Below, one piece after another: positions 1 to 24,048 of a stretch of 64,000 bases of DNA. Under the pieces are notes generated by a model. That model did not search any database. It saw only the letters and a list, made by a program, of their open reading frames with translations, and had not been told where the DNA came from. Positions within the stretch are counted from its first letter, which is position 1. Every line of letters begins with the position of its first letter. A program made the position numbers and the translations under genes. The stretch is taken from IMG/VR virus record IMGVR_UViG_3300042923_000601, positions 124,001 to 188,000 of that record. One strand, written 5' to 3'.

Positions 1-2
1 CA

Positions 3-242
3 GCGCTAACTTCCCCTAGCCGTATTGCGATTAACGGTACTCCACAGGCTGGAGACTATGTATTGACCTCAGCAGCAGGTTGGGTGCATGTTGAAATCAC
101 CCTGCAAATCTTCGTTGGGACAGATGTATATTTCCCTAACCTCTATGGTACATCTGGAAGCACTATACAGATTGCTATGCCGGTATTGGTACCAGGAAGG
201 CACGGTGTAGGGATTCATGAATCCCCAATTTCAGCCGTATAA
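3..242 (+). CDS. 3' end of a truncated upstream gene, probably a beta-rich tail/virion protein
   Basis: Open frame from the window start to TAA at 240-242 (ALTSPSRIAING...GIHESPISAV), followed by a terminator hairpin. Confidence 0.6.
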   Translation, partial: ALTSPSRIAINGTPQAGDYVLTSAAGWVHVEITLQIFVGTDVYFPNLYGTSGSTIQIAMPVLVPGRHGVGIHESPISAV

Positions 243-259
243 CGTATCGCACAAATCGA

Positions 260-291
260 GAAGAGACGGTAAATACTGTCTCTTCTTTTTT
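260..291 (+). terminator. Rho-independent terminator
   Basis: Stem GAAGAGACGGT / ACTGTCTCTTC, loop AAAT, followed by a T-run. Confidence 0.85.
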
Positions 292-312
292 GCATGAGAG
301 TCTATTCGACAA

Positions 313-324
313 AACAACATGATA
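313..324 (+). promoter_or_regulatory. AR9-type late promoter AACA-N6-TA
   Basis: AACA ACATGA TA upstream of the giant fibre gene; the same motif precedes many structural genes in the window. Confidence 0.65.
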
Positions 325-369
325 AGTACATGTATCAAAATCATACTTACACGAAGGGGGATAAGCCCG

Positions 370-3300
370 ATGTCATTACCTTATGTGCTTTCTGAATTGG
401 GGAAATTGAGCAACTCGCTCACAAATGTAATCCAGCAGATTGAAACTCAGCTGGGAAACGGCACGTTAACGTTAGACGGGCTGAAAAGTGATATCCAGGC
501 TATCTTGAATAGCGCTGGTCAGGCGAATGGGCTGGCACCACTCAATGGTACAGCCACGATCAACAAGCAGTATCTGCCACCTATACAAGAGCTGGTTAAA
601 CACGGCAACGAGTGGCATGACAAAGCGTATGTGACTCAGACCGAGATTGATACCTCGGTTAGCGCGTATGCGGCTAGACGGGACAACCCGAACGTCGTTA
701 CAAAGGCACAGGTCGGTTTGAGTAACGTGGACAACGTTAAACAAGAACCCTACCGTAACCTTGGTCTGAACGCCAAATCGGCGACTGACTTGCCGAATAC
801 CTACCCTGTAGGGATCAGCTATATGCTGGCTGATAGCACTAAAGGATTCCCATTTACCGGAGTCCATAATGGTGTAATGACTTACAACTTGAGCGATGGC
901 ACCACATCTACTTACCAATTTGCATTCAATTATGAGAATGCAAGGGTTCCCCGTATACGCGTACGCTCAGCTACCCTGGGTAATACAGCATGGGGTGACT
1001 GGGCTGTTATGTATACCAGCGCAGAGCCTCCTACAAAGGCTGATCTGGGTCTTGGGAATGTACAGAACTACCCAGTTGCAACTGATGCTGAAGCAGCTGC
1101 TGGGGTATCTAACGTAACGTACATGACACCTGCCCGGACTAAAACTACTGTAGATGCTGCGGTTTCCAGTGTCAGCAATACACAGGTACTTGGCCCAGGT
1201 ACAAATCTTGTAACGGCTGGTAAAGAGGGCGCAGAGCTTGACCTGAAGGTTAATGGTCGCACCCTTGTAAATATTCTGGGTACAATGGGTAGTGGGGAGT
1301 CCGTGGCAAACTGGGGTATATCCGGTACAGCACCAACTATATCCACTACACAGAAACGGTCAGGAACAGCTTCGTTTAAATTCAGCACGACTGACACGTC
1401 AGGTGTGTTGGTCAAAGACCTTGCCATCCCACTGGATAAATCCAAGTATTATATGGTGACTTGCTGGGCGTATGTTGAATCGTATACTAGCGGTGGAGCA
1501 ACACTTAACATTCGTGAATACAATACATCAAATGTACGATACAATGTGAGTGTGAATACGACGAAAGTCGGCGAATGGCAGCAGCTTCTTCTTAAGGTAC
1601 CTAATAACAACACCATCTCTACCACTGAAGGGTTCCGTATCATTGCTGGTGTCAACACCACTGGTACAATGGTTGTATACTACGATGAACTTCGACTGTA
1701 TGAAGTTTCTGCAGCTGAATACGCCGCCATTGGTACTACGCTGGCCACACCAGAGCAGATCGACGCCTATTTCCCGTACGTGGATGGTAAACAACACGTT
1801 CAAGGCGTTGCTATTACGAAGCAGGGTAAGAACTTGCTGCTCCCACTGACTCAAAGAGGTACAAACAACGGTACTGTAATCGATGCGTATGCATTTGACC
1901 ATCCAGCACTCGTTGCCTTCGGTAATGGGTACATGACGTATGATGTAATTCCCAATACCGACTACGTTTTTTCTGCGGTGCCAGGTGCTACAGGTCAAAT
2001 GGGTGTATACAATGACACTGCTACGGTAGCGTTATCGGATTATGCCAACACTCCACGTGCATTTAATAGTGGAGCAAATACAAAGGTGCGCATATATTTC
2101 AGAAATACAGTTGTAGGCACAGTTCGATTCTCTGATCTTCAACTGGAATTCGGCACTGTAGCTACACCATTCGCACCCGCTGAACCTCAAACTGTCGTCC
2201 TTCCAGTGACACTTGGTGAAGTTGGAGGGATAAAAGACTCCGTATCGAACGCAGGTACTGAGTGGTTGTACACTGAGAGAGTAAGGAAGAACGTAGTAAT
2301 CGACGGGTCATTAACATGGGCCTATAATGATTCTCCCGGTACTGGGCTTAGAGTTGTCAAAACCGCAATGGCTGGTGGTAGTTCTGCAATGCCTGTCCGT
2401 ACCGTGTTGTATGATGGCCGTGTAGGGGGTTCACACTTACCTGCCGGTACAAATAACCGTGCAAGTGCAACCACGGATACGTTCTACATTATGGTTTCAA
2501 ATGCTGAAGCTGGGTGGACAGATACACTTACACCTAGCGCCAATGCAATTAAAGCGCTGATGAATGGATGGGAGGCAGTTGCTAACAACGGTACCACGTA
2601 CACAAGCTGGACGTCTATCCTTGACGGAAGTGTAGCACCGACAAATACTGAAGCATGGGTTGCCGCAAATAAGGCACCGAGCTGGAGTGCATGGTGTTCA
2701 CTTGACTATGCGTTGGGAACCGCCGCTATACCGGTTACTATCTCATCTGCTGAAGGTGCAATCAGCCTTCACCCGGGTGGCAATCAGGTAACCGTTGAGA
2801 CCGGTATTATTCAACGCGAGAAAATCGCCCCTCAACTTTCAACTACCTACGGTAGATACTACATCAATGAAGTGGGTGCAACAGTATCCGCTGTTGACTC
2901 TCCTTTGAAGTACAAAACAAATCGGATTTTGGATGTCTATGCTGGCGGAACCAAAGCCAAATGGATATCTGAAACCAATGCATCTAACCAGAACGGGACG
3001 GCGATCGCCTCCATTCTCACAGCCGACTATGACGCGTCCAAAACTTACTATGCAACGTATATTGCACTGGATAAGTATCTGATGACGCCATCTGTCGCGG
3101 AAGTAAATGCATCATGGAAATCCGGTTTAAACGGTGTTGTGCCTGAATTGGCTCAAAGCGTTGCCGATCTTAAATCAGCAATGGATTATCCTGTACTCTA
3201 TTCGCCTGAAATGCTAGGTGAACCAACAGTACCGACAGCGCCTGATGGTACTCGAAATAAGCAAGCTGCTAGTACAGAGTTTGCAGCTAAAGTTGCCGAA

Positions 3301-6300
3301 TCCTATGCAAATGCAAAGTTCATTAAAGAAGACCATACTCAGGCCATCAGCCAAGGGCTGTCGATTATCAATGGTGGTGAGACAGGCGCAGACGTTGATT
3401 TCAGTATTAACGGTCGCACATTAGTCAACCTTCTTGGTAATTACGGTAATTTTGAGGTTGATAGTAATAATGACGGTCTCGGAGATGGCTGGATTCGACA
3501 AGGTGGAACGCTTACCCTGTCAACGACAGGTGTAGCATATGGCACTAAATCTCAACGGATCACATCGACTTCATCTGACACATCCATAACAGACCGCGGT
3601 ATGTATCGGTATGTATGGCTTGAGGCAAGTAAGTACTATGTGGCAATTGCACATTTGACTACTGATGGTACTACTATTGGTATGATTCGCATGGAGGAAG
3701 GTGCATCTGGTACCAATATAGATACAAGTTCCTCAGTTAACCAAACGTTGTTCATTAAGTTCTCGCCAGTAGCTACCAAAAACTTTGTCTTCCGGGTATT
3801 TAACCGGGCACCTGTTGGGTCTGTTGGCTGGATTGAAATTGACGGTATTAGTATTTACGAAGTAGATGCGGCCACGTATGCACGAATTGGTGTAGATATT
3901 ACTGCATCCAACATTCGCACATATCTCCCATATGTGGATGGTAAACAGCATCTGCAGAATATTGTCATCAGTAAGCAAGGACTTAACCTAATGCCAAACG
4001 CGCCTGAAAGTGTTAGCACTGTTGCTAAGCTGGATGGGCCGTATGCCATGACTTTAGTTGCAACCGCAGCAGGACAGAGCAGTTTCTGGGATATTCCTGT
4101 TAAACCTGGTGTAACGTATACAATACGAGCTGAACTGACAGGTACAGTTGGTATTATCGCACGCACTCTGTTTAAGGAAGACCTATCTACGAACGCTGCA
4201 TATGCAACAGCTTTAACTTCTACAGGTACGTACACCTTCACCGCATTTGAAGGTTCGGCATTTGTACGGGTATATTTTAATAGCACGGCTGCAGGCACAT
4301 CTACACTTAAGAATTGGATGATGGTAGTTGGTGATGCAACTGCTTTACCGACAACATTTGTTCCGTCTGATATCCCGCAAACCGTTATTCTCCCGGTTAC
4401 TCTCGGTGAAACGAGTGGGGTTACAGATACCGTTTACAACTCTGGGTCTGAGTGGCTCTACGTTGAACGGATTAAGAAAAATGTACCGCTTGTAGGTGGC
4501 CTTGCATGGGCGTTTAATACAACCTTCACTGGTGTAAAACGTCTATCTCTTGCTCTATCACCAGCAGCACTCAGCGGGTTTTCATCCGCTCGTGTTGTCC
4601 GGTATGATGGTCTCCAGTTTAAAAATAATGAAACTACGGCGTCCGGCAATCCTAACGTCAGTCAGATATCAAACAATCAACTTCTTTTGAATTTGGCTAC
4701 TGCTGATACGGGCTGGGTTGACGCACTAACCCCTAACACAAATGCAATCAAGGCATTCTTCAACGGCTGGAAAGCGACTGCTAATAATGGAACGGCTTAT
4801 ACCACATGGGCATCCTCTATTGATGGTAGCGCACCAGCCACTAACACCGAAGCATGGGTTGCAGAGAATAAGGCACCGGGAATGACTACATGGGGTACTG
4901 TAGACTATGTACTGGCATCTGCTGAAGTACCAACTGCTGTTTCAGCCGCAGAAGGTAGTATCACCTTACACCCTGGTAATAATCAGATTTCTGTAAACAC
5001 TGGTGTTATCGTTCGTGAGAAAGTTAACCCTGTGTTTTACGTATCTGGTAATTACTACGTCATCAATAATATCGCAACCACACAGAATCTCTACCTCAGC
5101 ATGTTGAAGTACCGCATGGCTGATGTAGTGACACTGTACGAAGAATCAACTGTGTTCAACCGGTATATCAAGCGTGCACATGGTAATGCGTACGGGACGT
5201 ATCAAATGGAGATTTCACCATCAAATTTTGATACCACCAAGGATTACTACCTCACGTACATCGCACGGGATAAACCAGCGTTCTCTGGTTTTGTCACCGA
5301 CATGACCGCAAACTGGAAGACAGGTATTACTGGCACCGTGACCGAACTTGTTCAAGCTGTTGCTGAGCTTCGTAACGGTGACGATACGAAAATGTACCAT
5401 AATCCACACTTTACAGGTGAGCCAACTGTACCAACGGCAGCCGATGGTACTCGTACCAAGCAAGCTGCCAGTACCGAGTTCACAGGTAGAGCGATCGACA
5501 ATTTCTCGGCTTCCAAGCTACAACGTGCGGATAACGTGCAGGTTTTGAGTCAAGGTACAAATATCATTGATGGTGGTGACACCGGAGGTGATCTTGATCT
5601 TACCGTAAACGGTCGCACACTGGTCAACCTCCTTGGTAACTACGGTTCCGGAGAGAGTTTATCTGGGTGGTCACTGGCCGGTACCACGGTGCCAACGATA
5701 TCCACCACCCAAAAACGTTCAGGTACCTCGTCATTTAAAATGGCAACGGGTGCAACTGGAGGAAGTTATCTGTTCCGAGACTTCAACACTTCCCTTCAAT
5801 CGACTAAGCAATATGTAGTAGCCGGGTGGGCATTTGTTGAGTCATGGTCGTCAGTAGCGGCTGGCCCCTCAATTACCTTGTATGATGTAGGTACAAATAC
5901 TCAGAAATATCAGGTACTGGGCGATAAAGCGATTATTGGTTCATGGCAGCCTCTGGTTCTGAAAGTACCAACTAGCAATACTCTTGTAGGGACAGGGTTC
6001 AGAATCTTAATAGGGCATGGTAGTGCAGGTGCAAGTGTGTCTTATTACAGCGACATTCGTCTGTATGAAGTTACTGCCGCCGAATATGCTGCTATCGGTA
6101 CGACGATTACAGGTGATGCATTTGACACTGCTTTCCCATACGTTAATGGTAGACAGCATGTGCAAGGTGTTGCTATCACTAAGCAAGGTCAAAACTTACT
6201 AGCAAGTAAACCACCCGTGCTTAATGCAAGAGCAAGAATGAATGGTCCGTATGATATGGTATTGGATGCCACTGGAGGTAACGATTCGTCGTATTTCCTA

Positions 6301-9300
6301 ATTGATGTCCCTGCCAACACTACGATTACGCTAAGTTTAGCACATAACGGACGCGTAGCTATTGCCAACGCAGCCGGGACTGTGAATCTCGTAGGGTATT
6401 CGTCATCCCAATTACTTACGGTAAACACCGGCAGTAATACTACTATCGGGGTACACTTCAGTAACTACTCGGCTGGAACGGGTACATTTACATTTAAGAA
6501 CTGGATGCTTGTCATTGGGGATGCAACCGCACTCCCGTCGACATTCACTCCAGCTGAACCACAAACCGCTATTCTACCTGTAACTCTCAGCCAGATTGGA
6601 GATGCACGGGATACCGTGTACAAAGAGGGTTCAGACTGGATGTATAACGAACGAATCAAGAAAGGAGTCACACTGACGGGTGCTCTGCCATGGACACTTG
6701 GGACTAGCTATACTGGATACAAGTACGTAACCGTGCAGTCCAGTAATTTCCCAGGAATGTATATGGATAAAACAGCCGCGAATATATCGACAGCTCCACC
6801 GCTTCGTGTCACTAAGTATAACGGAGAACCTGTTACGCATGCAGTGTCTTTCTCATCCGAAGGGTCGGACAGATTTAACTATGGTACCGACGTGTCCAAG
6901 GTTGATATCACGGTGTCATCAGGAGATTCTGGATGGGGTGACAGCTACAGTCCATCAGCGGCTGAAATTGCTGCCTATTTCTATGGATATCGCATGAATA
7001 ACGGTACATTTGGTACTGCGTATAACGGAACTGGTACTAAAACATGGGCTGTTATTGGCGCGACAAATAATACCGGTGCGGTAACCGTTGTCCCAACATC
7101 TCAAGCACCAATCACGGCATTGTGGAGTCCGTATATTCTTGACTACACGTTGTCATCAGCTGCAGCACCTTCATTCATCCCTAATGCTGAGGGTGACATC
7201 ACTCTGCATCCGGGAAAGAACCAAATTGCTGTAGAGACCGGAATTATCCAGAGAGAGAAGGTTACACCAAGTCCATATCTAACCAATTACTACATCAACG
7301 CACTTTCAGGGGATAAACTGTCCCTAAGACCATCACGCATACTACAGGTTTATAAAGGAAATAATGCGGATTCTAAGTGGATACAGATAACTAGATCGAC
7401 ATCTGAGGAACCTTCGTATTCTGTATATGGGCCAGCGTATGCCATTATAAAGTCTGGTGATTTTGACCCGACTGCAACCTATTACGTAACATATGTGGTT
7501 GCCCAGAAACACACCAGATCAGCTAATCTGTCTGACGTAACTACATCATGGAAATCCGGTATTAACGGGGTAGTTGCCGAGCTTACTCAGGCCGTAGCTG
7601 ATCTTCGCGAATCCATCGATTATCCTGTACTCTATTCACCTGAAATACTGGGTGAGCCAACAGTTCCAACAGCACCAGACGGTACTCGAAATAAGCAAGC
7701 GGCTAGTACAGAGTTTGCAGCCCGGGTTGCCGAGAATTACACCGCTGCCACGCTTGACGGTGTGACAAACGTCCAAACACTTGCTTCCGGTGTGTCCCTT
7801 ATCACCGCAGATAAGGTTGGGTCGGACCTTGACCTGATCATTAATGGTCGGACGCTGGTTAACATCTTGGGCACCGTTGGGGGTGGAGAAAGCTTAACTG
7901 GTACCATACCAGCCGGTGTTGCTCCAGTGATTTCTACTACCCAGAAACGGTCTGGTTTATCGTCATACAAGTATGTACCAACGGCATCATCTCCGAGTTA
8001 CTTTTATAAAGACTACACTGTTTCGCTTGACAAGTCAAAGTACTATGTACTTGGCGCATGGTTTTATACTGAGTCAACAGCGAATACTGGTATGACTGAA
8101 GTGTCACTACGTGACGCTGGATCGTTTACAGCTAGATACTCGATATACGGAGCCCAATCGGTTACGGGTAGCTGGCAATGGCGGTTCGCGAAAATACCGG
8201 CTAACAATACCTTAGTTGGAAATGGGTTTAGACTTCTTGTCGGTATGGGCGGTGGTTATGCAGGTGTGTTCTATATCGATGATATTCGTCTCTATGAGAT
8301 CACTGCTGCGGAATACAACGCAATTGGGACAACGATTGATGGAGATGCTGTTGACCAGTACTATCCGTATGTGGATGGGAAAAAGCATACCCAAGGTTTA
8401 GCGATCACTAAATTCGGGCGAAATTTGCTGGATGGTATTCCGATCACGCTTCATGCTAACGCTAAGATGAATGGGCTGTATGATCTGACACTAACTGCAA
8501 CCGCCACCTGGTCTCATAGCTGGTTACCAACTATACCAGTTGTCGGTGGCCGAAAGATGACGTTCTCAATTGATCCGTTAACAGTGAACGGTGCCTATGT
8601 CTACGTCTTTGAGTATGACAGTAATGGGACGCAGCTTTCATCCGTGGGAGCGGTTGCGAATATCAACTTCTCATCTCTGACATTCACAACCAATACACAA
8701 ACGGTAACAATTCGTGTTCAACTTACTAATGCGATTGCTAGTGGCACGTTCACCTTTAAGAATTGGAAGTTGGAATACGGTGACAAGACACCATTTGAAC
8801 CAGCGGCACCACAGAATGTAATCATCCCAGTTACCCTTGGGCAAATTGGTGATGTTACTGACACTGTGTACAATGCAGGTTCAGACTGGATGTACGCTGA
8901 GCGCATTAAGAAAGATGTTGTTTTGGACGGTTCTTTGACTTGGGGAGTGTATAGTACAGTAACAGGGTTTAAGAATGTTCAGGCCGCAATCCCTTCACTG
9001 AGTGGGACGGGCGGCGCTGATGACGCTGCACTTGCTGTGCGATATGACGGAATACCCCTTAAGAATGTAGATGAAGCTGTTGCATCTTGGACACAGCCGG
9101 ATTATTTCAGACTGTATAACGGATCGGTTTATATGTCTATCAGATCGACCGACTCTGGTTGGACTGATGCGCTGAACCCTAACGTTAACGCGGTCAAAGC
9201 ATTTATGAATGGGTGGAAGGCTGTTGGAAGCAATGGTACTGTATACACAAGCTGGGTATCCATCCTTGATGCAAGTGTACCGACAACCAATACCGAAGCA

Positions 9301-12300
9301 TGGGTTGCTGCCAATAAAGCACCGGGCTGGACTGGTTGGGCGACGCTTGATTATGTGATGACATCAGCACCAGCACCTGTACCGATTCGACTCTCTGAAG
9401 GCAGCATCTCTCTACATGGTGGCGTAAACCAGATTATGGTTGAAACCGGGGTCATCCAACGGGAAAAAGCTAAGCCGATCTATGACAACGGATTTTGGAA
9501 CATCAACGCCCAAGTCGGAAGTAACAACGATTCAAAACTTGCATACCGCACTAAACGGACACTAGCTATCTATAAAGACGCTAACATCGATCCAAGCTGG
9601 ATTGTTGGAACACGTCCAAGTACAAGCACACTGATTCCACTATTCGGCAATGATGGGGTTCAGGCTCCGACTGCCATGTATGATCCAACTGCTACTTATT
9701 ACGTCACATATCTGGTATTAGATCAGTATGCTGTGACTCCTAGTCTTACGAATATCAGTGCATCGTGGAAAACCGGTCTTAACGGTGTAGTAACATCCCT
9801 TGCACACGATGTCGCCATGCTTCAGGCAGACAACGATCGTCAGGACTTTGCTGACAAGTATCTGAATGACAAAGTGGCAGTGTTGCAAAACCTCTACCCT
9901 ACCACACTTACAGGAGATTTTGCCATCAATGCAAACGGTAAAGACCTTCTGCAAATGGTTGTAGCTGCTGGTAATGGATTTAAGACGCTTTGCGCCAATT
10001 CAACATCCACTAACATACCTTCTGGGGTAACATTCCGAGGGCATTCTTTTGGATCAGTTGGGTCTGACGGGGAGTGGACTGGCTTTGTACAGCTGTACAG
10101 TCAGCTTAACACTAACTTCAGTAACTTCCGGTACGGTGCTTCCGGTTGGGGTGGTTGGCAGAAAAACATCAATGAAAATATGGCATCCGGTGAAACTCGC
10201 GTCAATGCTATCAGCCTCGGCGGGTATAATGTTGAGAAGACGAAGTCGTATGCGATCCCAAATACCTTAACTAACGCAAAAATGGATATTACTTGGGAAC
10301 CAGTTCTTAGTTCCGGCACGGTGGAAATCACAGTCACATGTGGATTTAACACTGTGAACGCGAACGGGGTTATCCGAAAGGTGATCAGCTACGGCTCAAA
10401 CGCATCAGGTGGAATCAATCCGTATAACTCCTATTACAAAGAGGTACTTGGACCAATCAAGAACTACCTTGGTGTATCGGAGCTGGTATACGACTCAACT
10501 ACCGCAAATTTAAAAATTACGGTAGAGACACTAGCCAATGGGTACGTGTTTGGTGGTACTGTAACGGTGAAGTTTCTTTCATCTATGGGACGCGCTGTTC
10601 CAAATATCACAATCGGTGATCCGTACTCTGGTGCTTCCCTCGGGTCAGTTGTCCCTGTACAGGTAATACCGGATGATACAGTAACTACCTCCGGATACCA
10701 GATTCAGAAGCATCCGCTGACGAACAATATCGGTCAAAATATTCTACTGACGGCCAACACCGACCTCAACACCGTTGTTACAGCAGGTTTCTACAGCGGA
10801 AATGGATTAACAAATGCTCCAACCAATGAAGTAACATGGTGGTATGTTCAGGTATATGTACACAGCGGGTCTGTCGGGTATGTATTACAGAGAGCCTATC
10901 ATTTGAGTGCAACTGGAACGCCGACCGAGTATATTCGCCGCAGGGTCAATAATACTTGGACAACATGGGTTTACGTACCAAATAGCAGTATGCTTAATGT
11001 GGCAAACGGTATTCTACAACTGGACAGCAGCGGACTCGCACCACTGGCACAACTCCCAGCTATTCAGAAATGGCTGCTTACTAGCAATACTGGTTCTGGT
11101 AAGGATGGTGTTGCAACGTACGACCTCAACACACTCATTACCACAGGGTACTATTCCATAAATACCAACAGCACGAATATGCCGATATCAGGATCATCCA
11201 CCATGCTTCTTGTGATGTACTTCGGATCGACATACTACCAGCAAGAAGCTACAGTCTATGCAACAGGGCCAGTGGTTCGTAAGTTCGTTCGCGAAACACG
11301 AAACTCTGGTACTACTTGGACCGCATGGGCGGAAATCGAAACAACTGCTAAAAAGGATGTCGCGAACGGTTATGCAGGGTTAAATGCCAGCGGGGTTTTA
11401 CTACCTTCTGTCATGCCAGCCACTGTGACCAAACGGGTCAACCTGTATGGACAGCTTCAGATTACGTCATATCGTAGATCGGTTGTTGCGCTTTGCGAAG
11501 TGACAAACACTGAACCTGGGGCTACTTCCTATACCAATGGCGTACTCACCTTCAAGCGTGTTAATGGGCTTGCTGGACAGACTACCATTATGGTAAGTGC
11601 TGAAAAACGATGGAGTAGTACAGCGATGAATATCTCAGTCCTTAAGATGGGATTGACTGGTGCTGCCATTCGCCCATGTACGTTTACGTATAATGGTGTG
11701 AAATACGGTGGACTTGAAATCTATATCGAGGCTGCTGAATCGCAACTGGTTGAGTTTAATGGTGCTGGTAACTTCACACCGTTTGGTGTGGATTACTATA
11801 CCGTAAACACATCCACTGTCGTTAATGCCGAGATAAACAACTCGCTTGGGCTTGTCGAGGGAACCGACTTCTATTACATCAACGGGATTTTCATGAATGA
11901 TGTCAGTATTTCCCCTACGACAGACTCAATTGCGAACAGACCAGTGCTACGCGACAGTAACAAAAAGATCGCAGAAGTTGCATCTACTCGTAGCAACGGG
12001 GTCAACATTGCCCTTACTGCCACGAATACGTTGACAACAGCTGTCTCTTACACCACGTCAGGTGTCGTAGCGAACTATGTTGTGTATGTCACAATATGGC
12101 CAAGCGTAGCGACCACATTAACAATCCAACTGACGTACACTTCACCAATGGGAGGCTCACAAACTACGGTGATCTTAAACGCCAAACAGCTTGCAGCCGG
12201 GGCTGAGTCTAGCCTAATCCCACTGTACGTTACAGCAAATGCATTCTCAACTATGAACCTCCAGTATCTGAGCACGACGACGAACTCGACGAATCCTCTG

Positions 12301-12330
12301 AGAATATCGTACACAATACAGGAGATGTAA
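370..12330 (+). CDS. Giant modular tail fibre / receptor-binding protein (~3990 aa)
   Basis: Likely start ATG 370 after GAAGGGGG (track start 319). Contains the fibre motifs DNPNVVTKAQVGLSNVDN and PTVPTAPDGTRNKQAASTEF, four ~730-aa cassettes each opening with NGRTLVNxLG and carrying carbohydrate-binding-like beta domains, and C-terminal knob-like repeats (DLNTVVTAGFY / DLNTLITTGYY). Confidence 0.85.
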   Translation: MSLPYVLSELGKLSNSLTNVIQQIETQLGNGTLTLDGLKSDIQAILNSAGQANGLAPLNGTATINKQYLPPIQELVKHGNEWHDKAYVTQTEIDTSVSAYAARRDNPNVVTKAQVGLSNVDNVKQEPYRNLGLNAKSATDLPNTYPVGISYMLADSTKGFPFTGVHNGVMTYNLSDGTTSTYQFAFNYENARVPRIRVRSATLGNTAWGDWAVMYTSAEPPTKADLGLGNVQNYPVATDAEAAAGVSNVTYMTPARTKTTVDAAVSSVSNTQVLGPGTNLVTAGKEGAELDLKVNGRTLVNILGTMGSGESVANWGISGTAPTISTTQKRSGTASFKFSTTDTSGVLVKDLAIPLDKSKYYMVTCWAYVESYTSGGATLNIREYNTSNVRYNVSVNTTKVGEWQQLLLKVPNNNTISTTEGFRIIAGVNTTGTMVVYYDELRLYEVSAAEYAAIGTTLATPEQIDAYFPYVDGKQHVQGVAITKQGKNLLLPLTQRGTNNGTVIDAYAFDHPALVAFGNGYMTYDVIPNTDYVFSAVPGATGQMGVYNDTATVALSDYANTPRAFNSGANTKVRIYFRNTVVGTVRFSDLQLEFGTVATPFAPAEPQTVVLPVTLGEVGGIKDSVSNAGTEWLYTERVRKNVVIDGSLTWAYNDSPGTGLRVVKTAMAGGSSAMPVRTVLYDGRVGGSHLPAGTNNRASATTDTFYIMVSNAEAGWTDTLTPSANAIKALMNGWEAVANNGTTYTSWTSILDGSVAPTNTEAWVAANKAPSWSAWCSLDYALGTAAIPVTISSAEGAISLHPGGNQVTVETGIIQREKIAPQLSTTYGRYYINEVGATVSAVDSPLKYKTNRILDVYAGGTKAKWISETNASNQNGTAIASILTADYDASKTYYATYIALDKYLMTPSVAEVNASWKSGLNGVVPELAQSVADLKSAMDYPVLYSPEMLGEPTVPTAPDGTRNKQAASTEFAAKVAESYANAKFIKEDHTQAISQGLSIINGGETGADVDFSINGRTLVNLLGNYGNFEVDSNNDGLGDGWIRQGGTLTLSTTGVAYGTKSQRITSTSSDTSITDRGMYRYVWLEASKYYVAIAHLTTDGTTIGMIRMEEGASGTNIDTSSSVNQTLFIKFSPVATKNFVFRVFNRAPVGSVGWIEIDGISIYEVDAATYARIGVDITASNIRTYLPYVDGKQHLQNIVISKQGLNLMPNAPESVSTVAKLDGPYAMTLVATAAGQSSFWDIPVKPGVTYTIRAELTGTVGIIARTLFKEDLSTNAAYATALTSTGTYTFTAFEGSAFVRVYFNSTAAGTSTLKNWMMVVGDATALPTTFVPSDIPQTVILPVTLGETSGVTDTVYNSGSEWLYVERIKKNVPLVGGLAWAFNTTFTGVKRLSLALSPAALSGFSSARVVRYDGLQFKNNETTASGNPNVSQISNNQLLLNLATADTGWVDALTPNTNAIKAFFNGWKATANNGTAYTTWASSIDGSAPATNTEAWVAENKAPGMTTWGTVDYVLASAEVPTAVSAAEGSITLHPGNNQISVNTGVIVREKVNPVFYVSGNYYVINNIATTQNLYLSMLKYRMADVVTLYEESTVFNRYIKRAHGNAYGTYQMEISPSNFDTTKDYYLTYIARDKPAFSGFVTDMTANWKTGITGTVTELVQAVAELRNGDDTKMYHNPHFTGEPTVPTAADGTRTKQAASTEFTGRAIDNFSASKLQRADNVQVLSQGTNIIDGGDTGGDLDLTVNGRTLVNLLGNYGSGESLSGWSLAGTTVPTISTTQKRSGTSSFKMATGATGGSYLFRDFNTSLQSTKQYVVAGWAFVESWSSVAAGPSITLYDVGTNTQKYQVLGDKAIIGSWQPLVLKVPTSNTLVGTGFRILIGHGSAGASVSYYSDIRLYEVTAAEYAAIGTTITGDAFDTAFPYVNGRQHVQGVAITKQGQNLLASKPPVLNARARMNGPYDMVLDATGGNDSSYFLIDVPANTTITLSLAHNGRVAIANAAGTVNLVGYSSSQLLTVNTGSNTTIGVHFSNYSAGTGTFTFKNWMLVIGDATALPSTFTPAEPQTAILPVTLSQIGDARDTVYKEGSDWMYNERIKKGVTLTGALPWTLGTSYTGYKYVTVQSSNFPGMYMDKTAANISTAPPLRVTKYNGEPVTHAVSFSSEGSDRFNYGTDVSKVDITVSSGDSGWGDSYSPSAAEIAAYFYGYRMNNGTFGTAYNGTGTKTWAVIGATNNTGAVTVVPTSQAPITALWSPYILDYTLSSAAAPSFIPNAEGDITLHPGKNQIAVETGIIQREKVTPSPYLTNYYINALSGDKLSLRPSRILQVYKGNNADSKWIQITRSTSEEPSYSVYGPAYAIIKSGDFDPTATYYVTYVVAQKHTRSANLSDVTTSWKSGINGVVAELTQAVADLRESIDYPVLYSPEILGEPTVPTAPDGTRNKQAASTEFAARVAENYTAATLDGVTNVQTLASGVSLITADKVGSDLDLIINGRTLVNILGTVGGGESLTGTIPAGVAPVISTTQKRSGLSSYKYVPTASSPSYFYKDYTVSLDKSKYYVLGAWFYTESTANTGMTEVSLRDAGSFTARYSIYGAQSVTGSWQWRFAKIPANNTLVGNGFRLLVGMGGGYAGVFYIDDIRLYEITAAEYNAIGTTIDGDAVDQYYPYVDGKKHTQGLAITKFGRNLLDGIPITLHANAKMNGLYDLTLTATATWSHSWLPTIPVVGGRKMTFSIDPLTVNGAYVYVFEYDSNGTQLSSVGAVANINFSSLTFTTNTQTVTIRVQLTNAIASGTFTFKNWKLEYGDKTPFEPAAPQNVIIPVTLGQIGDVTDTVYNAGSDWMYAERIKKDVVLDGSLTWGVYSTVTGFKNVQAAIPSLSGTGGADDAALAVRYDGIPLKNVDEAVASWTQPDYFRLYNGSVYMSIRSTDSGWTDALNPNVNAVKAFMNGWKAVGSNGTVYTSWVSILDASVPTTNTEAWVAANKAPGWTGWATLDYVMTSAPAPVPIRLSEGSISLHGGVNQIMVETGVIQREKAKPIYDNGFWNINAQVGSNNDSKLAYRTKRTLAIYKDANIDPSWIVGTRPSTSTLIPLFGNDGVQAPTAMYDPTATYYVTYLVLDQYAVTPSLTNISASWKTGLNGVVTSLAHDVAMLQADNDRQDFADKYLNDKVAVLQNLYPTTLTGDFAINANGKDLLQMVVAAGNGFKTLCANSTSTNIPSGVTFRGHSFGSVGSDGEWTGFVQLYSQLNTNFSNFRYGASGWGGWQKNINENMASGETRVNAISLGGYNVEKTKSYAIPNTLTNAKMDITWEPVLSSGTVEITVTCGFNTVNANGVIRKVISYGSNASGGINPYNSYYKEVLGPIKNYLGVSELVYDSTTANLKITVETLANGYVFGGTVTVKFLSSMGRAVPNITIGDPYSGASLGSVVPVQVIPDDTVTTSGYQIQKHPLTNNIGQNILLTANTDLNTVVTAGFYSGNGLTNAPTNEVTWWYVQVYVHSGSVGYVLQRAYHLSATGTPTEYIRRRVNNTWTTWVYVPNSSMLNVANGILQLDSSGLAPLAQLPAIQKWLLTSNTGSGKDGVATYDLNTLITTGYYSINTNSTNMPISGSSTMLLVMYFGSTYYQQEATVYATGPVVRKFVRETRNSGTTWTAWAEIETTAKKDVANGYAGLNASGVLLPSVMPATVTKRVNLYGQLQITSYRRSVVALCEVTNTEPGATSYTNGVLTFKRVNGLAGQTTIMVSAEKRWSSTAMNISVLKMGLTGAAIRPCTFTYNGVKYGGLEIYIEAAESQLVEFNGAGNFTPFGVDYYTVNTSTVVNAEINNSLGLVEGTDFYYINGIFMNDVSISPTTDSIANRPVLRDSNKKIAEVASTRSNGVNIALTATNTLTTAVSYTTSGVVANYVVYVTIWPSVATTLTIQLTYTSPMGGSQTTVILNAKQLAAGAESSLIPLYVTANAFSTMNLQYLSTTTNSTNPLRISYTIQEM

Positions 12331-12342
12331 AACAATATGGTG
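12331..12342 (+). promoter_or_regulatory. Late-type promoter AACA-N6-TG
   Basis: AACA ATATGG TG between the fibre stop codon and the next RBS. Confidence 0.5.
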
Positions 12343-12390
12343 GGGACCTTGTGTCCCCACTCTATTTATATCAAATAGGAGGCGAATACA

Positions 12391-13845
12391 ATGGGTCAAC
12401 TAATCGTGTCAGGCGACGCAACCGCAGCTGACGTCCTTATAGGGCATACTTTTAGTGCTGGGCCGTTAAACGGTGTAGCCGGTACAATGCCTGATAACGG
12501 AGCCGGAGGAACGGTAACTCCTTCTGCATCCACACAAACAAAGGCCGCAGGATATTATTCAAGCGCTATTACAATATCGGCTGTAACGTTCACCGCAGCA
12601 AATGTATTAACAGGAACAACAATCGCGGGTACGGCAGGTACGATGCCAAACCGTGGAGCAGTAACAATCACCCCGTCTTCCGCTGCTCAAACTATCGCCG
12701 CCGGATACCATAATGGGTCAGGTACAGTTGCCGCAGTTACCGTGCCTGCCGCTAACGTATTGACAGGAACAACAATTGCAGGTGTGGCAGGGACCATGGT
12801 GAATAATGGTGCAGGTGGAACCGTAACTCCTTCTGCATCTACACAAACCAAACCAGCCGGATATTATTCAAGTGCTATTACAATTTCGGCAGTATCGGTT
12901 CCTGCAGCCAACGTTTTAACAGGTACTACAATTGCAGGAACCGCAGGTACGATGCCTAACCGTGGAGCAGTAACAATCACCCCGTCTGCCTCCGCTCAAA
13001 CCATTGCTGCTGGGTACCATAATGGCTCAGGTAGTGTTGCTGCTGTAACATTTCCGACAGAGTATGTTCTAAATGGTGTTGTTATTGCAGGCACTGAAGG
13101 AACGATGGCGAGTTATGGTGACCAAGAGATGATAACCGCTGGTGGGACAATGGGCGAAGGTTATGTCACGCTATCCAGTTACGCAGAGGGGTATGTTAAT
13201 AGTGGAACCACATACTCTTTGCAGTCGGGCGTTATTTCAGCCTCTAAGATTCTAGCCGGGCAGAATATTCTCGGTTTAGGGGGAACTGCGACATCTGATG
13301 CGACTGCTGTGGCCGCTGACGTCTTATCTGGTAAGACAGTATATATTAACGGGGCAAAAATTATTGGGACGATGCCTAACATTACGTCTGGATCAGACCC
13401 AGCACAAGGCGTTGGTCTATGGGGGGATGGCGGCTTAGCAGTGTATCCATCACCAGGATATCGTAAGGGTGGTGCGGGTGCTGGTGAAATTAAAGTATCT
13501 GTGGCTCAGCTCCAAACAGTCGCAAGTATACAGCCGGGGAACATCCGTAGTGGGGTTACTTTATTTGGAGTGGTGGGTAATGTGGTACCACGCGTGTATT
13601 CATACTATTCCTTCAGTATGGACGCGGGCTCTAACGTAGTCGGATATAACGCGGGGTTTACACCAAGGGCGATTGCAGTTAGAGGTACAGTTGGACAAAC
13701 TGTAGTTGCCGCATCCTGGTTTTCGGACGGCAATGTGTATGGGTCATTTGCCCAATACATTGCCATTTCCACAGCTGGAAATAACATCACTTTTACTAGA
13801 CAAACCTCCGGGACTATCAATTTTGATGTATCGATATTTGGCTAA
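12391..13845 (+). CDS. Tail fibre / fibre-associated protein with A/G/T-rich repeats
   Basis: RBS AGGAGG; repeats AANVLTGTTIAGxAGTM and ATAxAADVLxGxT typical of Firmicute phage fibres; ~102-aa tandem duplication. Confidence 0.7.
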   Translation: MGQLIVSGDATAADVLIGHTFSAGPLNGVAGTMPDNGAGGTVTPSASTQTKAAGYYSSAITISAVTFTAANVLTGTTIAGTAGTMPNRGAVTITPSSAAQTIAAGYHNGSGTVAAVTVPAANVLTGTTIAGVAGTMVNNGAGGTVTPSASTQTKPAGYYSSAITISAVSVPAANVLTGTTIAGTAGTMPNRGAVTITPSASAQTIAAGYHNGSGSVAAVTFPTEYVLNGVVIAGTEGTMASYGDQEMITAGGTMGEGYVTLSSYAEGYVNSGTTYSLQSGVISASKILAGQNILGLGGTATSDATAVAADVLSGKTVYINGAKIIGTMPNITSGSDPAQGVGLWGDGGLAVYPSPGYRKGGAGAGEIKVSVAQLQTVASIQPGNIRSGVTLFGVVGNVVPRVYSYYSFSMDAGSNVVGYNAGFTPRAIAVRGTVGQTVVAASWFSDGNVYGSFAQYIAISTAGNNITFTRQTSGTINFDVSIFG

Positions 13846-13873
13846 AAACGCAACACTAGACCTGGTATTATCA

Positions 13874-13885
13874 AACAATCTAATA
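13874..13885 (+). promoter_or_regulatory. Late promoter AACA-N6-TA
   Basis: AACA ATCTAA TA upstream of the endolysin RBS. Confidence 0.65.
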
Positions 13886-13915
13886 ACCCAAGTAAAAAAG
13901 GAGTGGATAAATCAT

Positions 13916-14860
13916 ATGCAAACCAAAGGCAATTTCCTGCTGATGGAACTGTCTGAGTTTCAGGCGTGGTTGGAGAAGCAAGTAATCACCCGTGCTGTTT
14001 CTAAAGTTCAGTTCCATCACACCGCAAGTCCTAACTACACAACACGTAAGATGGTTAATGGTGTAGCGACCCAGGATCACTTTAAGTGTCTGGAAGGCAT
14101 GCGCGACTACCATATCATCACCAACGGATGGTCTGCAACCGGTCAAAACATCACCATCTTCGAAGACGGTAAAGTGGCAATCAGTCTTGACCGCGATTTG
14201 AACAAAACTCCTGCTGGTATCACTGGCCAGAACACCGGTCAAATCTGTATCGAAAACATCGGTAACTTCGACAAGGGTGGCGACACGATGACAGCTAAGC
14301 AACGCGAAGCTATCATCCATGTGTATGCTTGCTTGGCTAAGAAGTTTAACCTGCCGATCGATACTGACCATTTTGTATACCATGCATGGTTTACAGCTAG
14401 TGGCACAAGACTCGCTGACTATACCCCTGGTAAGTCCTCGAAGTCCTGCCCGGGCACCAACTTCTTCGGCGCAGGAAACACGGTTGCATCTGCTAAAACG
14501 GTCGTGTTCCCGCTGATTCAAGCTGAACTCAACAGATTGAACGCGCCTGTTACTCCGCCGCAGCCGGTTCCATCAACAGATATCCCGCAGGAAATCACAG
14601 TGTATTACAACACCGTGAAGGATACCGGGGTACTGTACAATAACAAAACGTATGTCAAGCTTACCAAGCTGGCTGAAGTACTTGGATTTGAAGCCGGTTA
14701 TGATAACGCCACGAAGAAAGCAACAATCAACGGTAAGGAACTGCAAGATACCCTTGTAGTTGACGGTCGTGCATTTATTCAGGCACGTCCAATCGTTGAT
14801 GCCTTCGGCGGTGAACTGAGCTGGAATAATGATACCAAGGTGCTCAAGGTCACTAAGTAA
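13916..14860 (+). CDS. Endolysin: N-acetylmuramoyl-L-alanine amidase (Amidase_2-like) with a C-terminal copper-amine-oxidase-N-like wall-binding domain
   Basis: Start ATG 13916 after AAGGAG (track start 13706 overlaps the upstream gene). Zn-ligand motifs FHHTA, YHAWF and KSCPG; Pro-rich linker; C-terminal TYVKLTKLAEVLGFEAGYDNATK...LSWNNDTKVLKV. Confidence 0.85.
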   Translation: MQTKGNFLLMELSEFQAWLEKQVITRAVSKVQFHHTASPNYTTRKMVNGVATQDHFKCLEGMRDYHIITNGWSATGQNITIFEDGKVAISLDRDLNKTPAGITGQNTGQICIENIGNFDKGGDTMTAKQREAIIHVYACLAKKFNLPIDTDHFVYHAWFTASGTRLADYTPGKSSKSCPGTNFFGAGNTVASAKTVVFPLIQAELNRLNAPVTPPQPVPSTDIPQEITVYYNTVKDTGVLYNNKTYVKLTKLAEVLGFEAGYDNATKKATINGKELQDTLVVDGRAFIQARPIVDAFGGELSWNNDTKVLKVTK

Positions 14861-23455: not shown

Positions 23456-23469
23456 ATTGTGTCTGCCTC

Positions 23470-24048
23470 CTATTGCTTTTTGTGTATACTGCGTCCTACT
23501 TCTTTGTATAAAAGATCGCAAAATACCTTCATATGAGTTTTGCGGAATTCGACCGGTAAATTTGGCACTCCCACTAATTCATATGGGAATGCATACTTGC
23601 CGATGTGTTTATACGGGATGATTTCGTTAGACATGTGCTTGAGAAATATGGTTCGTCTACCTTCATGAATATCTTTCCGAGTAAGTTCGGTGAATTCAGA
23701 TAAGTATCGCCACTCATGATAGATTTTCTCCGGCGCGTAGGTTGTCATTTCAACCGCCGTGTTAACAAAGATTAAAATCGTTTCGATCAGGATCATTTCC
23801 AGCAACTGACCGAACTTTGCTCTTTCTACAGCGCCGTAATTTGCCTTGATGGCAGCCACGATAGCGTTTGGTGATATCGTAACTTCTCTTACAACGGTTC
23901 TTGCACGGCCGGTAAACTTAAACCGGACCAGTTCACCAGTGGGTATATTCCCAATGATAACGTTCGTTGCTAATTTCAGGCTGTTATCTCCCCTACAGAC
24001 CTGAATCATTTCGTTGAGCCGCCTCTTGACTCTCCGTTTACTGAACAT
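23470..24048 (-). CDS. Hypothetical protein (192 aa) co-transcribed with beta'-N
   Basis: GGGAGGG RBS; early-type promoter upstream. Confidence 0.65.
   Translation of the reverse strand: MFSKRRVKRRLNEMIQVCRGDNSLKLATNVIIGNIPTGELVRFKFTGRARTVVREVTISPNAIVAAIKANYGAVERAKFGQLLEMILIETILIFVNTAVEMTTYAPEKIYHEWRYLSEFTELTRKDIHEGRRTIFLKHMSNEIIPYKHIGKYAFPYELVGVPNLPVEFRKTHMKVFCDLLYKEVGRSIHKKQ

What the first reader, a model, noticed from the sequence alone, without database searches (positions are those of the whole stretch)
370..9850. Giant fibre built from four tandem ~730-aa cassettes whose sub-domains are independently shuffled
NGRTLVNxLG recurs near 1250, 3410, 5610 and 7845. Cassettes 1-3 each end in a PTVPTAxDGTRxKQAASTEF linker, and the linkers near 3181-3300 and 7616-7740 are near-identical at DNA level. 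The sub-domains are mosaic. The first beta-domain of cassettes 1, 3 and 4 shares PxISTTQKRSG while cassette 2 has GNFEVDSNNDG. The second domain of 2, 3 and 4 shares GxYxxxLxAT while cassette 1 differs. The third domain of 1, 2 and 4 shares TNTEAWVAxNKAP while cassette 3 differs. This suggests a multi-receptor fibre remodelled by recombination between conserved linkers.
Basis: partly seen in the sequence, partly recalled or inferred. Interest (0 to 1): 0.6.

Follow-up and report, generated by a model that had tools for sequence, protein, structure and literature searches.

The report
Four-cassette mosaic phage tail fibre
A soil jumbo phage encodes a 3,986-residue fibre made of four tandem copies of a receptor-binding unit that normally occurs once per Paenibacillus phage tail fibre; the copies share one duplicated scaffold, but some of their sugar-binding-like sub-domains were swapped in from other fibre genes.

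Summary
One claim is overstated: the two best-matching linkers are 88% identical over 116 nt, not near-identical.

Each cassette is predicted as helix, beta-stalk, two CBM-like beta-sandwiches (D1, D2), two further domains (D3, D4), helix. The inter-cassette linker is predicted to trimerise.

The cassette is the unit of a large, uncharacterised family of Bacillales tail-fibre proteins (PHROG 13022), mostly from Paenibacillus prophages. Of 171 relatives examined, 157 have one cassette, four have about 1.6-1.7, four have two, and none has more.

Mosaicism is real and statistically supported:
- On scaffold segments the four cassettes form one clade (96/97).
- On D1 and D3c, four-cassette monophyly is rejected (delta lnL about 90).
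- Cassette 2 D1 and cassette 3 D3c group with different external fibres.
- Relatives show near-identical segments whose ends lie mostly at or near domain borders.

The exchanges in this gene are old: the longest exact repeat is 20 nt. Multi-receptor binding is inferred, not shown. This is a new variant of a known kind.

The parts
353..360 (+). Shine-Dalgarno sequence GAAGGGGG ahead of the true start ATG 370
   Evidence: the database copy of the protein is 3986 aa, which matches a start at 370
370..12330 (+). Giant fibre gene, 3986 aa plus stop
370..1065 (+). N-terminal anchor region (aa 18-249 of the ORF numbered from 319). It gives weak matches to tail-collar-fibre PHROG 25620 and to PHROG 34368.
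   Evidence: distant relatives L082-L085 in IMG/VR
1066..3222 (+). Cassette 1 (aa 250-968). S 1066-1278, D1 1279-1707, K1 1708-1845, D2 1846-2154, D3a-c 2155-2724, D4 2725-3123, H 3124-3222. Its D2 is the odd one and groups with P0017.
3223..5421 (+). Cassette 2 (aa 969-1701). S 3223-3435, D1 3436-3864, K1 3865-3999, D2 4000-4332, D3a-c 4333-4923, D4 4924-5322, H 5323-5421. Its D1 is the GNFEVDSNNDG type, shared with P0014, P0018, P0026, P0032a, P0032b and P0033a.
5422..7656 (+). Cassette 3 (aa 1702-2446). S 5422-5634, D1 5635-6072, K1 6073-6207, D2 6208-6519, D3a-c 6520-7161, D4 7162-7557, H 7558-7656. Its D3c is the YNGTGTKxW type and is sister to P0003.
7657..9882 (+). Cassette 4 (aa 2447-3188). 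S 7657-7869, D1 7870-8301, K1 8302-8436, D2 8437-8781, D3a-c 8782-9369, D4 9370-9774, H 9775-9873. It ends in the NDRQDFAD motif that follows the cassette in single-cassette relatives.
3124..3435 (+). Inter-cassette junction 1/2: helix, then PTVPTAPDGTRNKQAASTEF, then helix and beta-stalk. It holds the best DNA match to junction 3/4, 7558-7869.
   Evidence: The trimer prediction was run on the equivalent 2/3 junction.
5266..5643 (+). Junction 2/3 (aa 1650-1775), the stretch folded as three copies. Contacts are heptad-spaced at 1655-1684, then continuous.
   Evidence: ipSAE 0.65, best control 0.00
9883..12327 (+). Non-cassette C-terminus (aa 3189-4003). Module aa 3281-3463 (nt 10159-10707) is 30% identical to residues 273-456 of Paenibacillus silagei tail protein P0040. 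Knob-like repeats plus a distal domain, aa 3477-3860 (nt 10747-11898), are 41% identical to P0040 1321-1714.
   Evidence: No Pfam, NCBIfam or PDB sequence match.

Best explanation
The gene encodes a homotrimeric virion fibre, most likely a tail fibre, of a soil jumbo phage distantly related to PBS1 and AR9. The host is probably Paenibacillus.

Its shaft is a string of four receptor-binding cassettes. Each cassette has a trimerising helix and beta-stalk, two CBM-like beta-sandwiches (D1, D2), and two further domains (D3, D4) with no clear solved counterpart.

The array arose by tandem duplication of a cassette that ordinarily occurs once per fibre in Paenibacillus phages and prophages. Individual sub-domains were later replaced by recombination with other members of the fibre family: D1 of cassette 2, D3c of cassette 3, and probably D2 of cassette 1. 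Crossovers fell at or near the conserved connectors.

The result is a fibre that displays up to 24 CBM-like modules in non-identical sets. It is inferred to bind several different cell-wall glycans, or one surface with high avidity.

Shown here: architecture, family membership, mosaic phylogeny and rarity of multi-cassette forms. Predicted: the folds and the trimer. Inferred: glycan binding, multi-specificity and host.
For: Architecture:
- One ORF with four full profile matches.
- AF2 model of cassette 3 has pLDDT 83.
- D1/D2 resemble the CBM22 tandem 4xup and CBM16 2zew (TM 0.80 by target) and Vip3 CBM-like domains.
- Three copies of the linker score ipSAE 0.65 against 0.00 for the best control. 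The runs share at least 83% of contacts and the partner pLDDT is at least 71. In calibration, 21 of 30 proteins solved as pairs and 0 of 23 solved as single chains reached the mark; that calibration used two copies, so the counts hold only roughly here.

Family:
- PHROG 13022 matches four times.
- 26 single-cassette hits, mostly Paenibacillus.
- 4,970 profile hits at E<=1e-3.
- Relatives lie after baseplate J in Paenibacillus phage Pd_22F and at the fibre position in Psychrobacillus phage Spoks.
- BFVD fold hits are tail proteins of Gram-positive phages.

Cassette number:
- Of 171 relatives, 157 have one cassette, four have about 1.6-1.7, four have two and none has more.
- In 78 IMG/VR loci no ORF has two cassettes.

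Mosaic:
- The scaffold tree places the four cassettes in one clade at 96/97.
- D1 data reject that clade (delta lnL 89.8). They also reject the D3c-type grouping (p 0.001).
- D3c data reject the four-cassette clade (delta lnL 91.0). They also reject the D1-type grouping (p 0.001).
- All four combinations of D1 type and D3c type exist.
- Relatives switch from 94-100% to 30-50% identity between adjacent segments.
- DNA-level segment ends lie mostly near domain borders.

Phage context:
- Split multisubunit RNA polymerase genes.
- Amidase_2 plus Cu_amine_oxidN1 endolysin.
- CheckV completeness estimate of 100%.
Against: - There are no experimental data: no virion proteomics, imaging or binding assays.
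- CBM assignment rests on predicted fold. Pfam CBM_4_9 is far below threshold in the window protein (11 bits against 25.9).
- D3 and D4 have no convincing structural match (best Z 6.0).
- The D2 test is marginal (p 0.048).
- D4 alone neither supports nor rejects four-cassette monophyly (p 0.33).
- Scaffold monophyly could reflect concerted evolution rather than duplication.
- Segment borders, and the choice of D1 and D3c, were guided by the pattern under test.
- The tail location in the jumbo phage itself is inferred from smaller phages.
- The trimer test was calibrated on dimers.
Confidence: 0.65

Rival explanations
1. Duplication and divergence only. Four in-gene duplicates diverged at different rates in different sub-domains, with no exchange from outside.
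For: The scaffold is monophyletic. All cassettes are old and divergent, and there are no recent conversion tracts.
Against: Cassette 2 D1 sits in a 98/96 clade with six external fibres. Cassette 3 D3c is sister to P0003 at 99/81. Four-cassette monophyly is rejected on both domains with delta lnL of about 90. Convergence on whole-domain sequence types is implausible.
Confidence: 0.05
2. Fusion of four pre-existing, different cassettes. The scaffold and linker parts were later homogenised by concerted evolution, because they must co-assemble in one trimer.
For: In every multi-cassette protein the scaffold parts of its own cassettes are sisters, which gene conversion would also produce. The linker is under strong purifying selection: 21 synonymous against 15 amino-acid differences in 70 codons.
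Against: Scaffold identity between cassettes is only about 40-58%. No DNA tract exceeds 88% identity. Any homogenisation would therefore be ancient and indistinguishable from duplication. It also needs four independent fusions.
Confidence: 0.15
3. Avidity or spacer fibre. The cassettes bind the same or similar ligand, or mainly lengthen the fibre, and the sub-domain differences have little functional meaning.
For: No binding data exist. Tandem CBMs often act through avidity (general knowledge). The backbone is conserved across cassettes.
Against: D1 and D3c types differ as much within the protein as between fibres of different prophages. Two-cassette relatives likewise pair unlike D1, D2 and D3c domains, for example P0031a against P0031b at 26-40%. 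That pattern suggests selection for diversity.
Confidence: 0.2
4. It is not a tail fibre but another surface adhesin of the virion, such as a head fibre or whisker, or a non-virion protein.
For: The flanking genes match PHROGs filed under 'head and packaging' as virion structural proteins. The N-terminal tail-collar match is weak (E 9.5e-5).
Against: Relatives occupy the tail-fibre position after baseplate J or after the distal tail protein. NCBI names some relatives 'phage tail protein'. The C-terminus is homologous to that of a Paenibacillus tail protein.
Confidence: 0.1
5. Assembly artefact that inflated a repeat.
For: The genome is a metagenome assembly.
Against: Cassettes are at most 88% identical in DNA over at most 116 nt, and the longest exact repeat is 20 nt. 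Identical contigs in an independent soil metagenome cross two junctions.
Confidence: 0.01

Closest known systems
Single-cassette tail-fibre proteins of Paenibacillus and other Bacillales phages and prophages (PHROG 13022). Examples: Paenibacillus phage Pd_22F QVQ56250.1, Psychrobacillus phage Spoks ORF16, and P0003 from Paenibacillus sp. BAC0078.
   Same: The same cassette end to end (profile positions about 30-720), at 27-50% identity. The same sub-domain types occur.
   Different: These proteins have one cassette in 850-1300 aa, and the phages are of ordinary size. The window protein has four cassettes and belongs to a jumbo phage.
Two-cassette Paenibacillus tail proteins: P0032 (P. aceti WP_120462841.1), P0031 (WP_379370386.1), and P0029 and P0030 from metagenomes.
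   Same: Tandem cassettes joined by a conserved helix and stalk linker. Scaffold parts within one protein are sisters, while D1, D2 and D3c are unlike.
   Different: They have two cassettes, not four. Each array duplicated independently in its own lineage.
Mosaic tail fibres of T-even, lambdoid, P2 and Mu-type phages, and the Streptococcus thermophilus receptor-binding protein whose variable regions are flanked by collagen-like repeats (my own knowledge). For CBMs in S. thermophilus phages see PMC7533335.
   Same: Host-range modules are exchanged by recombination at conserved flanking sequences.
   Different: No sequence relationship was found. The window gene has no collagen repeats. Here the exchange units are sub-domains inside a repeated cassette.
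CBM-rich adhesion devices of Gram-positive phages: the Deep-Blue and Vp4 baseplates (PMC11406892), and evolved Dit or Tal proteins.
   Same: CBM-fold modules on tail proteins that bind wall polysaccharides.
   Different: In those phages the CBMs are spread over several baseplate proteins. Here they are arrayed in series along one fibre.
Branched multi-tailspike systems (Ackermannviridae CBA120 TSP1-4, PMC11414711), and the BACON tandem repeats of crAssphage (PMC6949934).
   Same: They achieve polyvalency with several binding units, or with tandem repeats of carbohydrate-binding-like domains, in a phage structural protein.
   Different: The branched systems use separate polypeptides. BACON repeats are single small domains, not 730-aa multi-domain cassettes.

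Membership tests
PHROG 13022 / Paenibacillus-type tail-fibre cassette family | Full-length match to the family profile | tested here: met
   PHROG 13022 scores 1066 bits over 4 stretches. The cassette HMM matches four times at 1e-236 to 1e-273, covering profile positions 3-725.
PHROG 13022 / Paenibacillus-type tail-fibre cassette family | Gene lies in a tail or baseplate module | tested here: inconclusive
   This is met in relatives. In the window the neighbours are 'virion structural protein' PHROGs and an endolysin, and no recognisable baseplate gene was identified.
Carbohydrate-binding modules (CBM_4_9 / CBM16 / CBM22-like) | Sequence match above the Pfam gathering score | tested here: not met
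   PF02018 scores 11.1 bits against a cut-off of 25.9 in cassette 3. Relatives P0011 and P0022 reach 25.1-25.2 bits. The A3 profile against CBM16 chains gives E 0.02.
Carbohydrate-binding modules (CBM_4_9 / CBM16 / CBM22-like) | Beta-sandwich CBM fold | tested here: met
   Foldseek matches 4xup (CBM22 tandem, E 4e-7), 2zew (CBM16, target TM 0.80) and Vip3 domains. The model is a prediction.
Carbohydrate-binding modules (CBM_4_9 / CBM16 / CBM22-like) | Binds a carbohydrate ligand | not testable with these tools
   This needs binding assays.
Homotrimeric phage fibre | Trimerisation of shaft elements | tested here: met
   Three copies of aa 1650-1775 score ipSAE 0.65 against 0.00 for the best control, with heptad-spaced contacts. 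In calibration, 21 of 30 proteins solved as pairs and 0 of 23 solved as single chains reached the mark, but the calibration used dimers. This is a prediction only.
Pyocin-knob-type fibre tips | Recognisable knob domains at the C-terminus | tested here: inconclusive
   Internal repeats at aa 3477-3700 are homologous to repeats in P0040, and NCBI names relative P0016 'pyocin knob domain-containing'. However, no NCBIfam, Pfam or PDB sequence match was found.
Enzyme-driven fibre diversification (DGR, or Gin/Cin-type inversion shufflons) | Reverse transcriptase with template repeat, or inverted crossover sites flanking alternative segments | tested here: not met
   RVT_1 has no match in the 246.7-kb genome. 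Only short, imperfect inverted repeats were found, and no tandem DNA arrays.
PBS1/AR9/phiKZ-type jumbo phages (genome context) | Split multisubunit RNA polymerase beta and beta-prime genes | tested here: met
   PHROGs 2987, 2962 and 3148 match. Identity to Goe21, PBS1, AR9, Listeria phage LPJP1 and Staphylococcus phage S6-type jumbo phages is 31-33%.

The most novel reading that the evidence does not exclude
The fibre is a serial polyvalent adhesin. One trimeric shaft carries four differently specified receptor-binding heads, built by duplicating a scaffold and then exchanging individual CBM-like sub-domains with the fibre genes of the host genus's prophages. On this reading a lytic jumbo phage samples the receptor-binding repertoire of resident prophages and stacks it in one protein, which would widen or stabilise its host range. 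The family would then be a natural plug-and-play scaffold, with exchange points mapped here at the S/D1, D1/K1, D3a/D3b, D3b/D3c and D3c/D4 borders.
Probability: 0.35. Interest if true: 0.65.

Novelty: new variant of a known kind. Interest (0 to 1): 0.5.

Why it matters
Mosaic tail fibres are textbook, but three things here are less ordinary.

1. A complete multi-domain receptor-binding unit is repeated four times in one polypeptide. This is twice the largest number seen among the best-scoring relatives in 1.84 billion representative proteins.
2. There is a clean split between a scaffold that duplicates in place and binding-type sub-domains that are exchanged. This gives a map of natural exchange units, with apparent junctions, for a fibre family with thousands of members and no characterised representative.
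3. A jumbo phage fibre is linked to the prophage fibre pool of Paenibacillus, which points to the host genus.

If the cassettes bind different glycans, this would be a compact alternative to branched multi-tailspike systems for polyvalency. It would also be a template for engineering the receptor-binding proteins of Gram-positive phages.

Tried and rejected
- Megablast of 1-12400 against 50,697 phage records found no match.
- The word-index search for long relatives (2,200-7,000 aa) found only the protein itself.
- The first structure job, on the untrimmed alignment A2, failed and was rerun on A3.
- NCBIfam gave nothing for the N-terminus, a cassette, the C-terminus or the downstream ORF.
- Pfam gave nothing above threshold for any part of the fibre.
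- A PDB sequence search of the C-terminus found nothing.
- The D3-D4 model gave no Foldseek match at E<=0.001. The best VIA-align Z was 6.0, to a phage 812 neck protein covering D4 only. I treat this as a generic Ig-like sandwich, not a family assignment.
- I looked for related jumbo phages through the upstream structural protein and found none. The fibre N-terminus found only four distant IMG/VR loci. Cassette number among sister jumbo phages therefore could not be compared.
- A shufflon or DGR mechanism is rejected.
- Recent intragenic gene conversion is rejected.
- Three literature searches found no description of this family or of a multi-cassette fibre.
- The linker looks like the widespread 'PTAPTA..GT..TQIATTAFV' tail-fibre motif as I recall it from memory. 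Pfam Phage_fiber_2 did not match the window protein, so this stays a lead only.
Only genetic code 11 was used.


Full report
**What is there.**
The finding lies inside a single ORF, 319..12330 on the + strand. A GAAGGGGG Shine-Dalgarno sequence precedes ATG 370, and the database copy of the protein is 3,986 aa. The gene is therefore 370..12330.

The window is bases 124001-188000 of a 246,689-bp single-contig virus record with 44.6% GC. CheckV rates the record as complete. It carries split multisubunit RNA polymerase genes, 31-33% identical to those of PBS1, AR9, Goe21, Listeria phage LPJP1 and Staphylococcus phage S6-type jumbo phages. Its endolysin combines Amidase_2 with a Cu_amine_oxidN1 domain. 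This is a jumbo phage of a Gram-positive host, assembled from a soil metagenome.

**Check of the observation.**
A MAFFT alignment of aa 250-968, 969-1701, 1702-2446 and 2447-3200 gives 36-44% pairwise identity.

Identity is uneven along the cassette:
- Cassette 2 drops to 11-30% against the others in the first beta-domain.
- Cassette 1 drops in the second domain.
- Cassette 3 drops to 25-44% in part of the third domain, where cassettes 1, 2 and 4 keep 58-74%.

A profile of the cassette matches the protein four times at 1e-236 to 1e-273. The cassettes occur nowhere else in the genome.

The one overstated claim concerns DNA. The linkers at 3181-3300 and 7616-7740 are 87.9% identical over 116 nt, and 79% over 210 nt. 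This is the best DNA match between cassettes. Across 70 codons, 21 differ synonymously and 15 change the amino acid. The longest exact direct repeat in the gene is 20 nt.

The array is therefore old, and the linker is held by purifying selection rather than recent conversion. An independent soil metagenome from another study holds identical contigs. Two of them span the cassette 1/2 and 3/4 junctions, which argues against an assembly artefact.

**Anatomy.**
The AF2 model of cassette 3 has pLDDT 83 and pTM 0.77. In cassette numbering it gives:
- helix 13-33 and a short beta-stalk 36-68 that carries NGRTLVNLLG
- beta-sandwich D1 at 72-217
- a helical connector K1
- beta-sandwich D2 at 244-365
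- D3 at 381-580 and D4 at 590-712
- helix 714-732

Foldseek matches D1/D2 to tandem CBM22 (4xup), CBM16 (2zew, target TM 0.80) and the CBM-like domains of Vip3. By sequence the CBM link is sub-threshold.

D3-D4 was folded alone (pLDDT 80) and has no convincing solved counterpart. BFVD matches are tail and minor structural proteins of Gram-positive phages.

Three copies of the 2/3 junction (aa 1650-1775) score ipSAE 0.65 against 0.00 for the best control. The runs share at least 83% of contacts and the partner pLDDT is at least 71. In calibration, 21 of 30 proteins solved as pairs and 0 of 23 solved as single chains reached the mark. That calibration used dimers, so the counts hold only roughly here. 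Contacts are heptad-spaced at 1655-1684 and then continuous. This fits a trimeric coiled coil that runs into an intertwined stalk.

The last 815 aa are not cassette. They are 41% identical to the knob-like repeats and distal domain of a Paenibacillus silagei 'phage tail protein' (P0040). One further module appears in a different order in the two proteins.

**Family.**
PHROG 13022 (function unknown, 933 positions) matches each cassette. The word-index search with one cassette found 26 proteins of 659-1298 aa, mostly from Paenibacillus genomes, each with a single cassette. A profile search of 1.84 billion representatives gave 4,970 hits at E<=1e-3 and 1,273 at E<=1e-30.

Cassette number in the 171 relatives fetched:
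- 157 have one cassette.
- Four have about 1.6-1.7.
- Four have two (P0029-P0032, including P. aceti WP_120462841.1).
- None has more.

A closer protein with three or more cassettes should have ranked at the top of the profile search. The window protein itself was not listed, however, so the library is not exhaustive. In 78 IMG/VR loci no ORF has two cassettes.

In Paenibacillus phage Pd_22F the homologue follows baseplate J and precedes XkdX. In Psychrobacillus phage Spoks it is the annotated tail fibre that follows the tape-measure protein and a tail protein.

**Test of the mosaic.**
I aligned 34 cassettes: the four from the window, 20 single-cassette relatives, and the cassettes of multi-cassette relatives. 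I then built maximum-likelihood trees per segment.

- **D1.** Cassette 2 falls in a 98/96 clade with P0014, P0018, P0026, P0032a, P0032b and P0033a. Cassette 4 is sister to P0003 (96/89). Holding the four window cassettes together costs 89.8 lnL (p-AU 3e-68). Holding the D3c-type grouping together is rejected at p 0.001.
- **D3c.** Cassette 3 is sister to P0003 (99/81). Cassettes 1, 2 and 4 lie in a 99/96 clade of twelve. Four-cassette monophyly costs 91.0 lnL, and the D1-type grouping is rejected at p 0.001.
- **D1 and D3c types.** All four combinations of D1 type and D3c type exist among the 34 cassettes.
- **D2.** This segment is poorly resolved. Cassette 1 groups with P0017 (93/81) and four-cassette monophyly is marginally rejected at p 0.048.
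- **D4.** D4 alone does not reject monophyly (p 0.33).
- **Scaffold.** On the concatenated scaffold (S+K1+D3a+D4+H, 379 columns) the four window cassettes form a clade at 96/97. The cassette pairs of P0029, P0030 and P0031 are each sisters at 100/99 to 100/100.

The simplest reading is that each multi-cassette array arose by duplication within its own gene, and that single sub-domains were later replaced from the wider fibre pool. Ancient concerted evolution of the scaffold cannot be excluded.

**Mechanism of exchange.**
Among the Paenibacillus relatives, adjacent segments switch between near-identity and 30-50% identity:
- P0012 against P0011: D1 0.98, D2 0.43, D3a 0.96, D3b 1.00, D3c 0.63, D4 0.96.
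- P0019 against P0024: D2 0.94, other domains about 0.5.
- P0017 against P0024: S 0.97 and D3c 0.96, but D1 0.48.

The K1 connector is the most conserved segment, at mean identity 0.50 against 0.22-0.37 for most of the other segments (D3c 0.43).

In IMG/VR DNA, segments of 93-99% identity end at the following profile positions:
- 63-86, where the S/D1 border is 68/69
- 201-206, where D1/K1 is 211/212
- 414-419, where D3a/D3b is 442
- 490, where D3b/D3c is 488/489
- 558, where D3c/D4 is 570

Three further segment ends, at 174, 267 and 601, lie 10-37 positions from the nearest border. This is a small sample and partly non-independent, but it fits homologous exchange at conserved connectors.

No reverse transcriptase, inversion sites or DNA tandem arrays are present, so no dedicated diversification enzyme is implied.

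**Function.**
By homology and context this is a host-adsorption fibre. The CBM-like D1 and D2 are the likeliest glycan binders, and as a trimer the fibre would carry 24 of them. Whether the four unlike sets confer several specificities or only avidity is untested. Paenibacillus as host is inferred from the nearest relatives of every part of the fibre.

**Verdict.**

It is a new variant of a known kind. It is a mosaic phage fibre, but it has four serial copies of a complete receptor-binding cassette, with a demonstrable split between a scaffold that duplicates and domains that are exchanged. The family has no characterised member. Interest is 0.5.

Noticed in passing
window 50303-60685 (+): A second giant ORF of 3,460 aa. 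Near its C-terminus it has Peptidase_C39_2 (aa 2686-2837), an SLT transglycosylase (2920-3021) and VanY (3175-3241), with weak PHROG hits to tape-measure and tail proteins. It is probably a virion-borne wall-degrading or ejection protein.
   Followed up: partly
window 21938-23521 (-), 24170-25369 (-), 44847-49130 (-): Split multisubunit RNA polymerase beta and beta-prime-like genes, as in PBS1, AR9 and phiKZ-type jumbo phages. The 1,427-aa piece is 31-33% identical to those of Bacillus, Listeria and Staphylococcus jumbo phages.
   Followed up: partly
window 12391-13845 (+) and 13706-14860 (+): Directly downstream of the fibre gene is a 484-aa ORF that matches only unknown-function PHROGs 38337 and 13589. 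Next is an Amidase_2 plus Cu_amine_oxidN1 endolysin-like ORF whose listed TTG start overlaps the 484-aa ORF by 140 nt. Whether the 484-aa protein is a fibre accessory or chaperone is open.
   Followed up: partly
relatives P0031 (aa 1439-1620), P0056, P0070, P0089, P0133, P0161: Some family members carry an extra domain of about 120-300 aa inserted inside D3c, splitting the profile match at about positions 540-545. This is a further level of modularity that the window protein lacks.
   Followed up: no
relatives P0125 and P0037/P0171: In these proteins most of D3 (profile positions about 415-540) is missing or replaced by a short unrelated stretch, so D3 is dispensable for the cassette scaffold.
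   Followed up: no
window 10159-10707 against P0040 residues 273-456: A module that lies after the cassettes in the window protein lies before the cassette in the Paenibacillus silagei tail protein. Module order along the fibre is permuted between relatives.
   Followed up: no
window 2600-8599: A second soil metagenome from a different study holds contigs with no differences from the window at about 5x word depth. The same phage genotype therefore occurs in two samples.
   Followed up: yes
Bacillus SPO1-like phages (for example BSP14, Goe3, phiNIT1 'tail fiber II'): These phages share only the D3 region of the cassette (cassette aa 411-605, 32-36% identity). D3 therefore circulates on its own in fibres of Herelleviridae-type Bacillus phages.
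   Followed up: no
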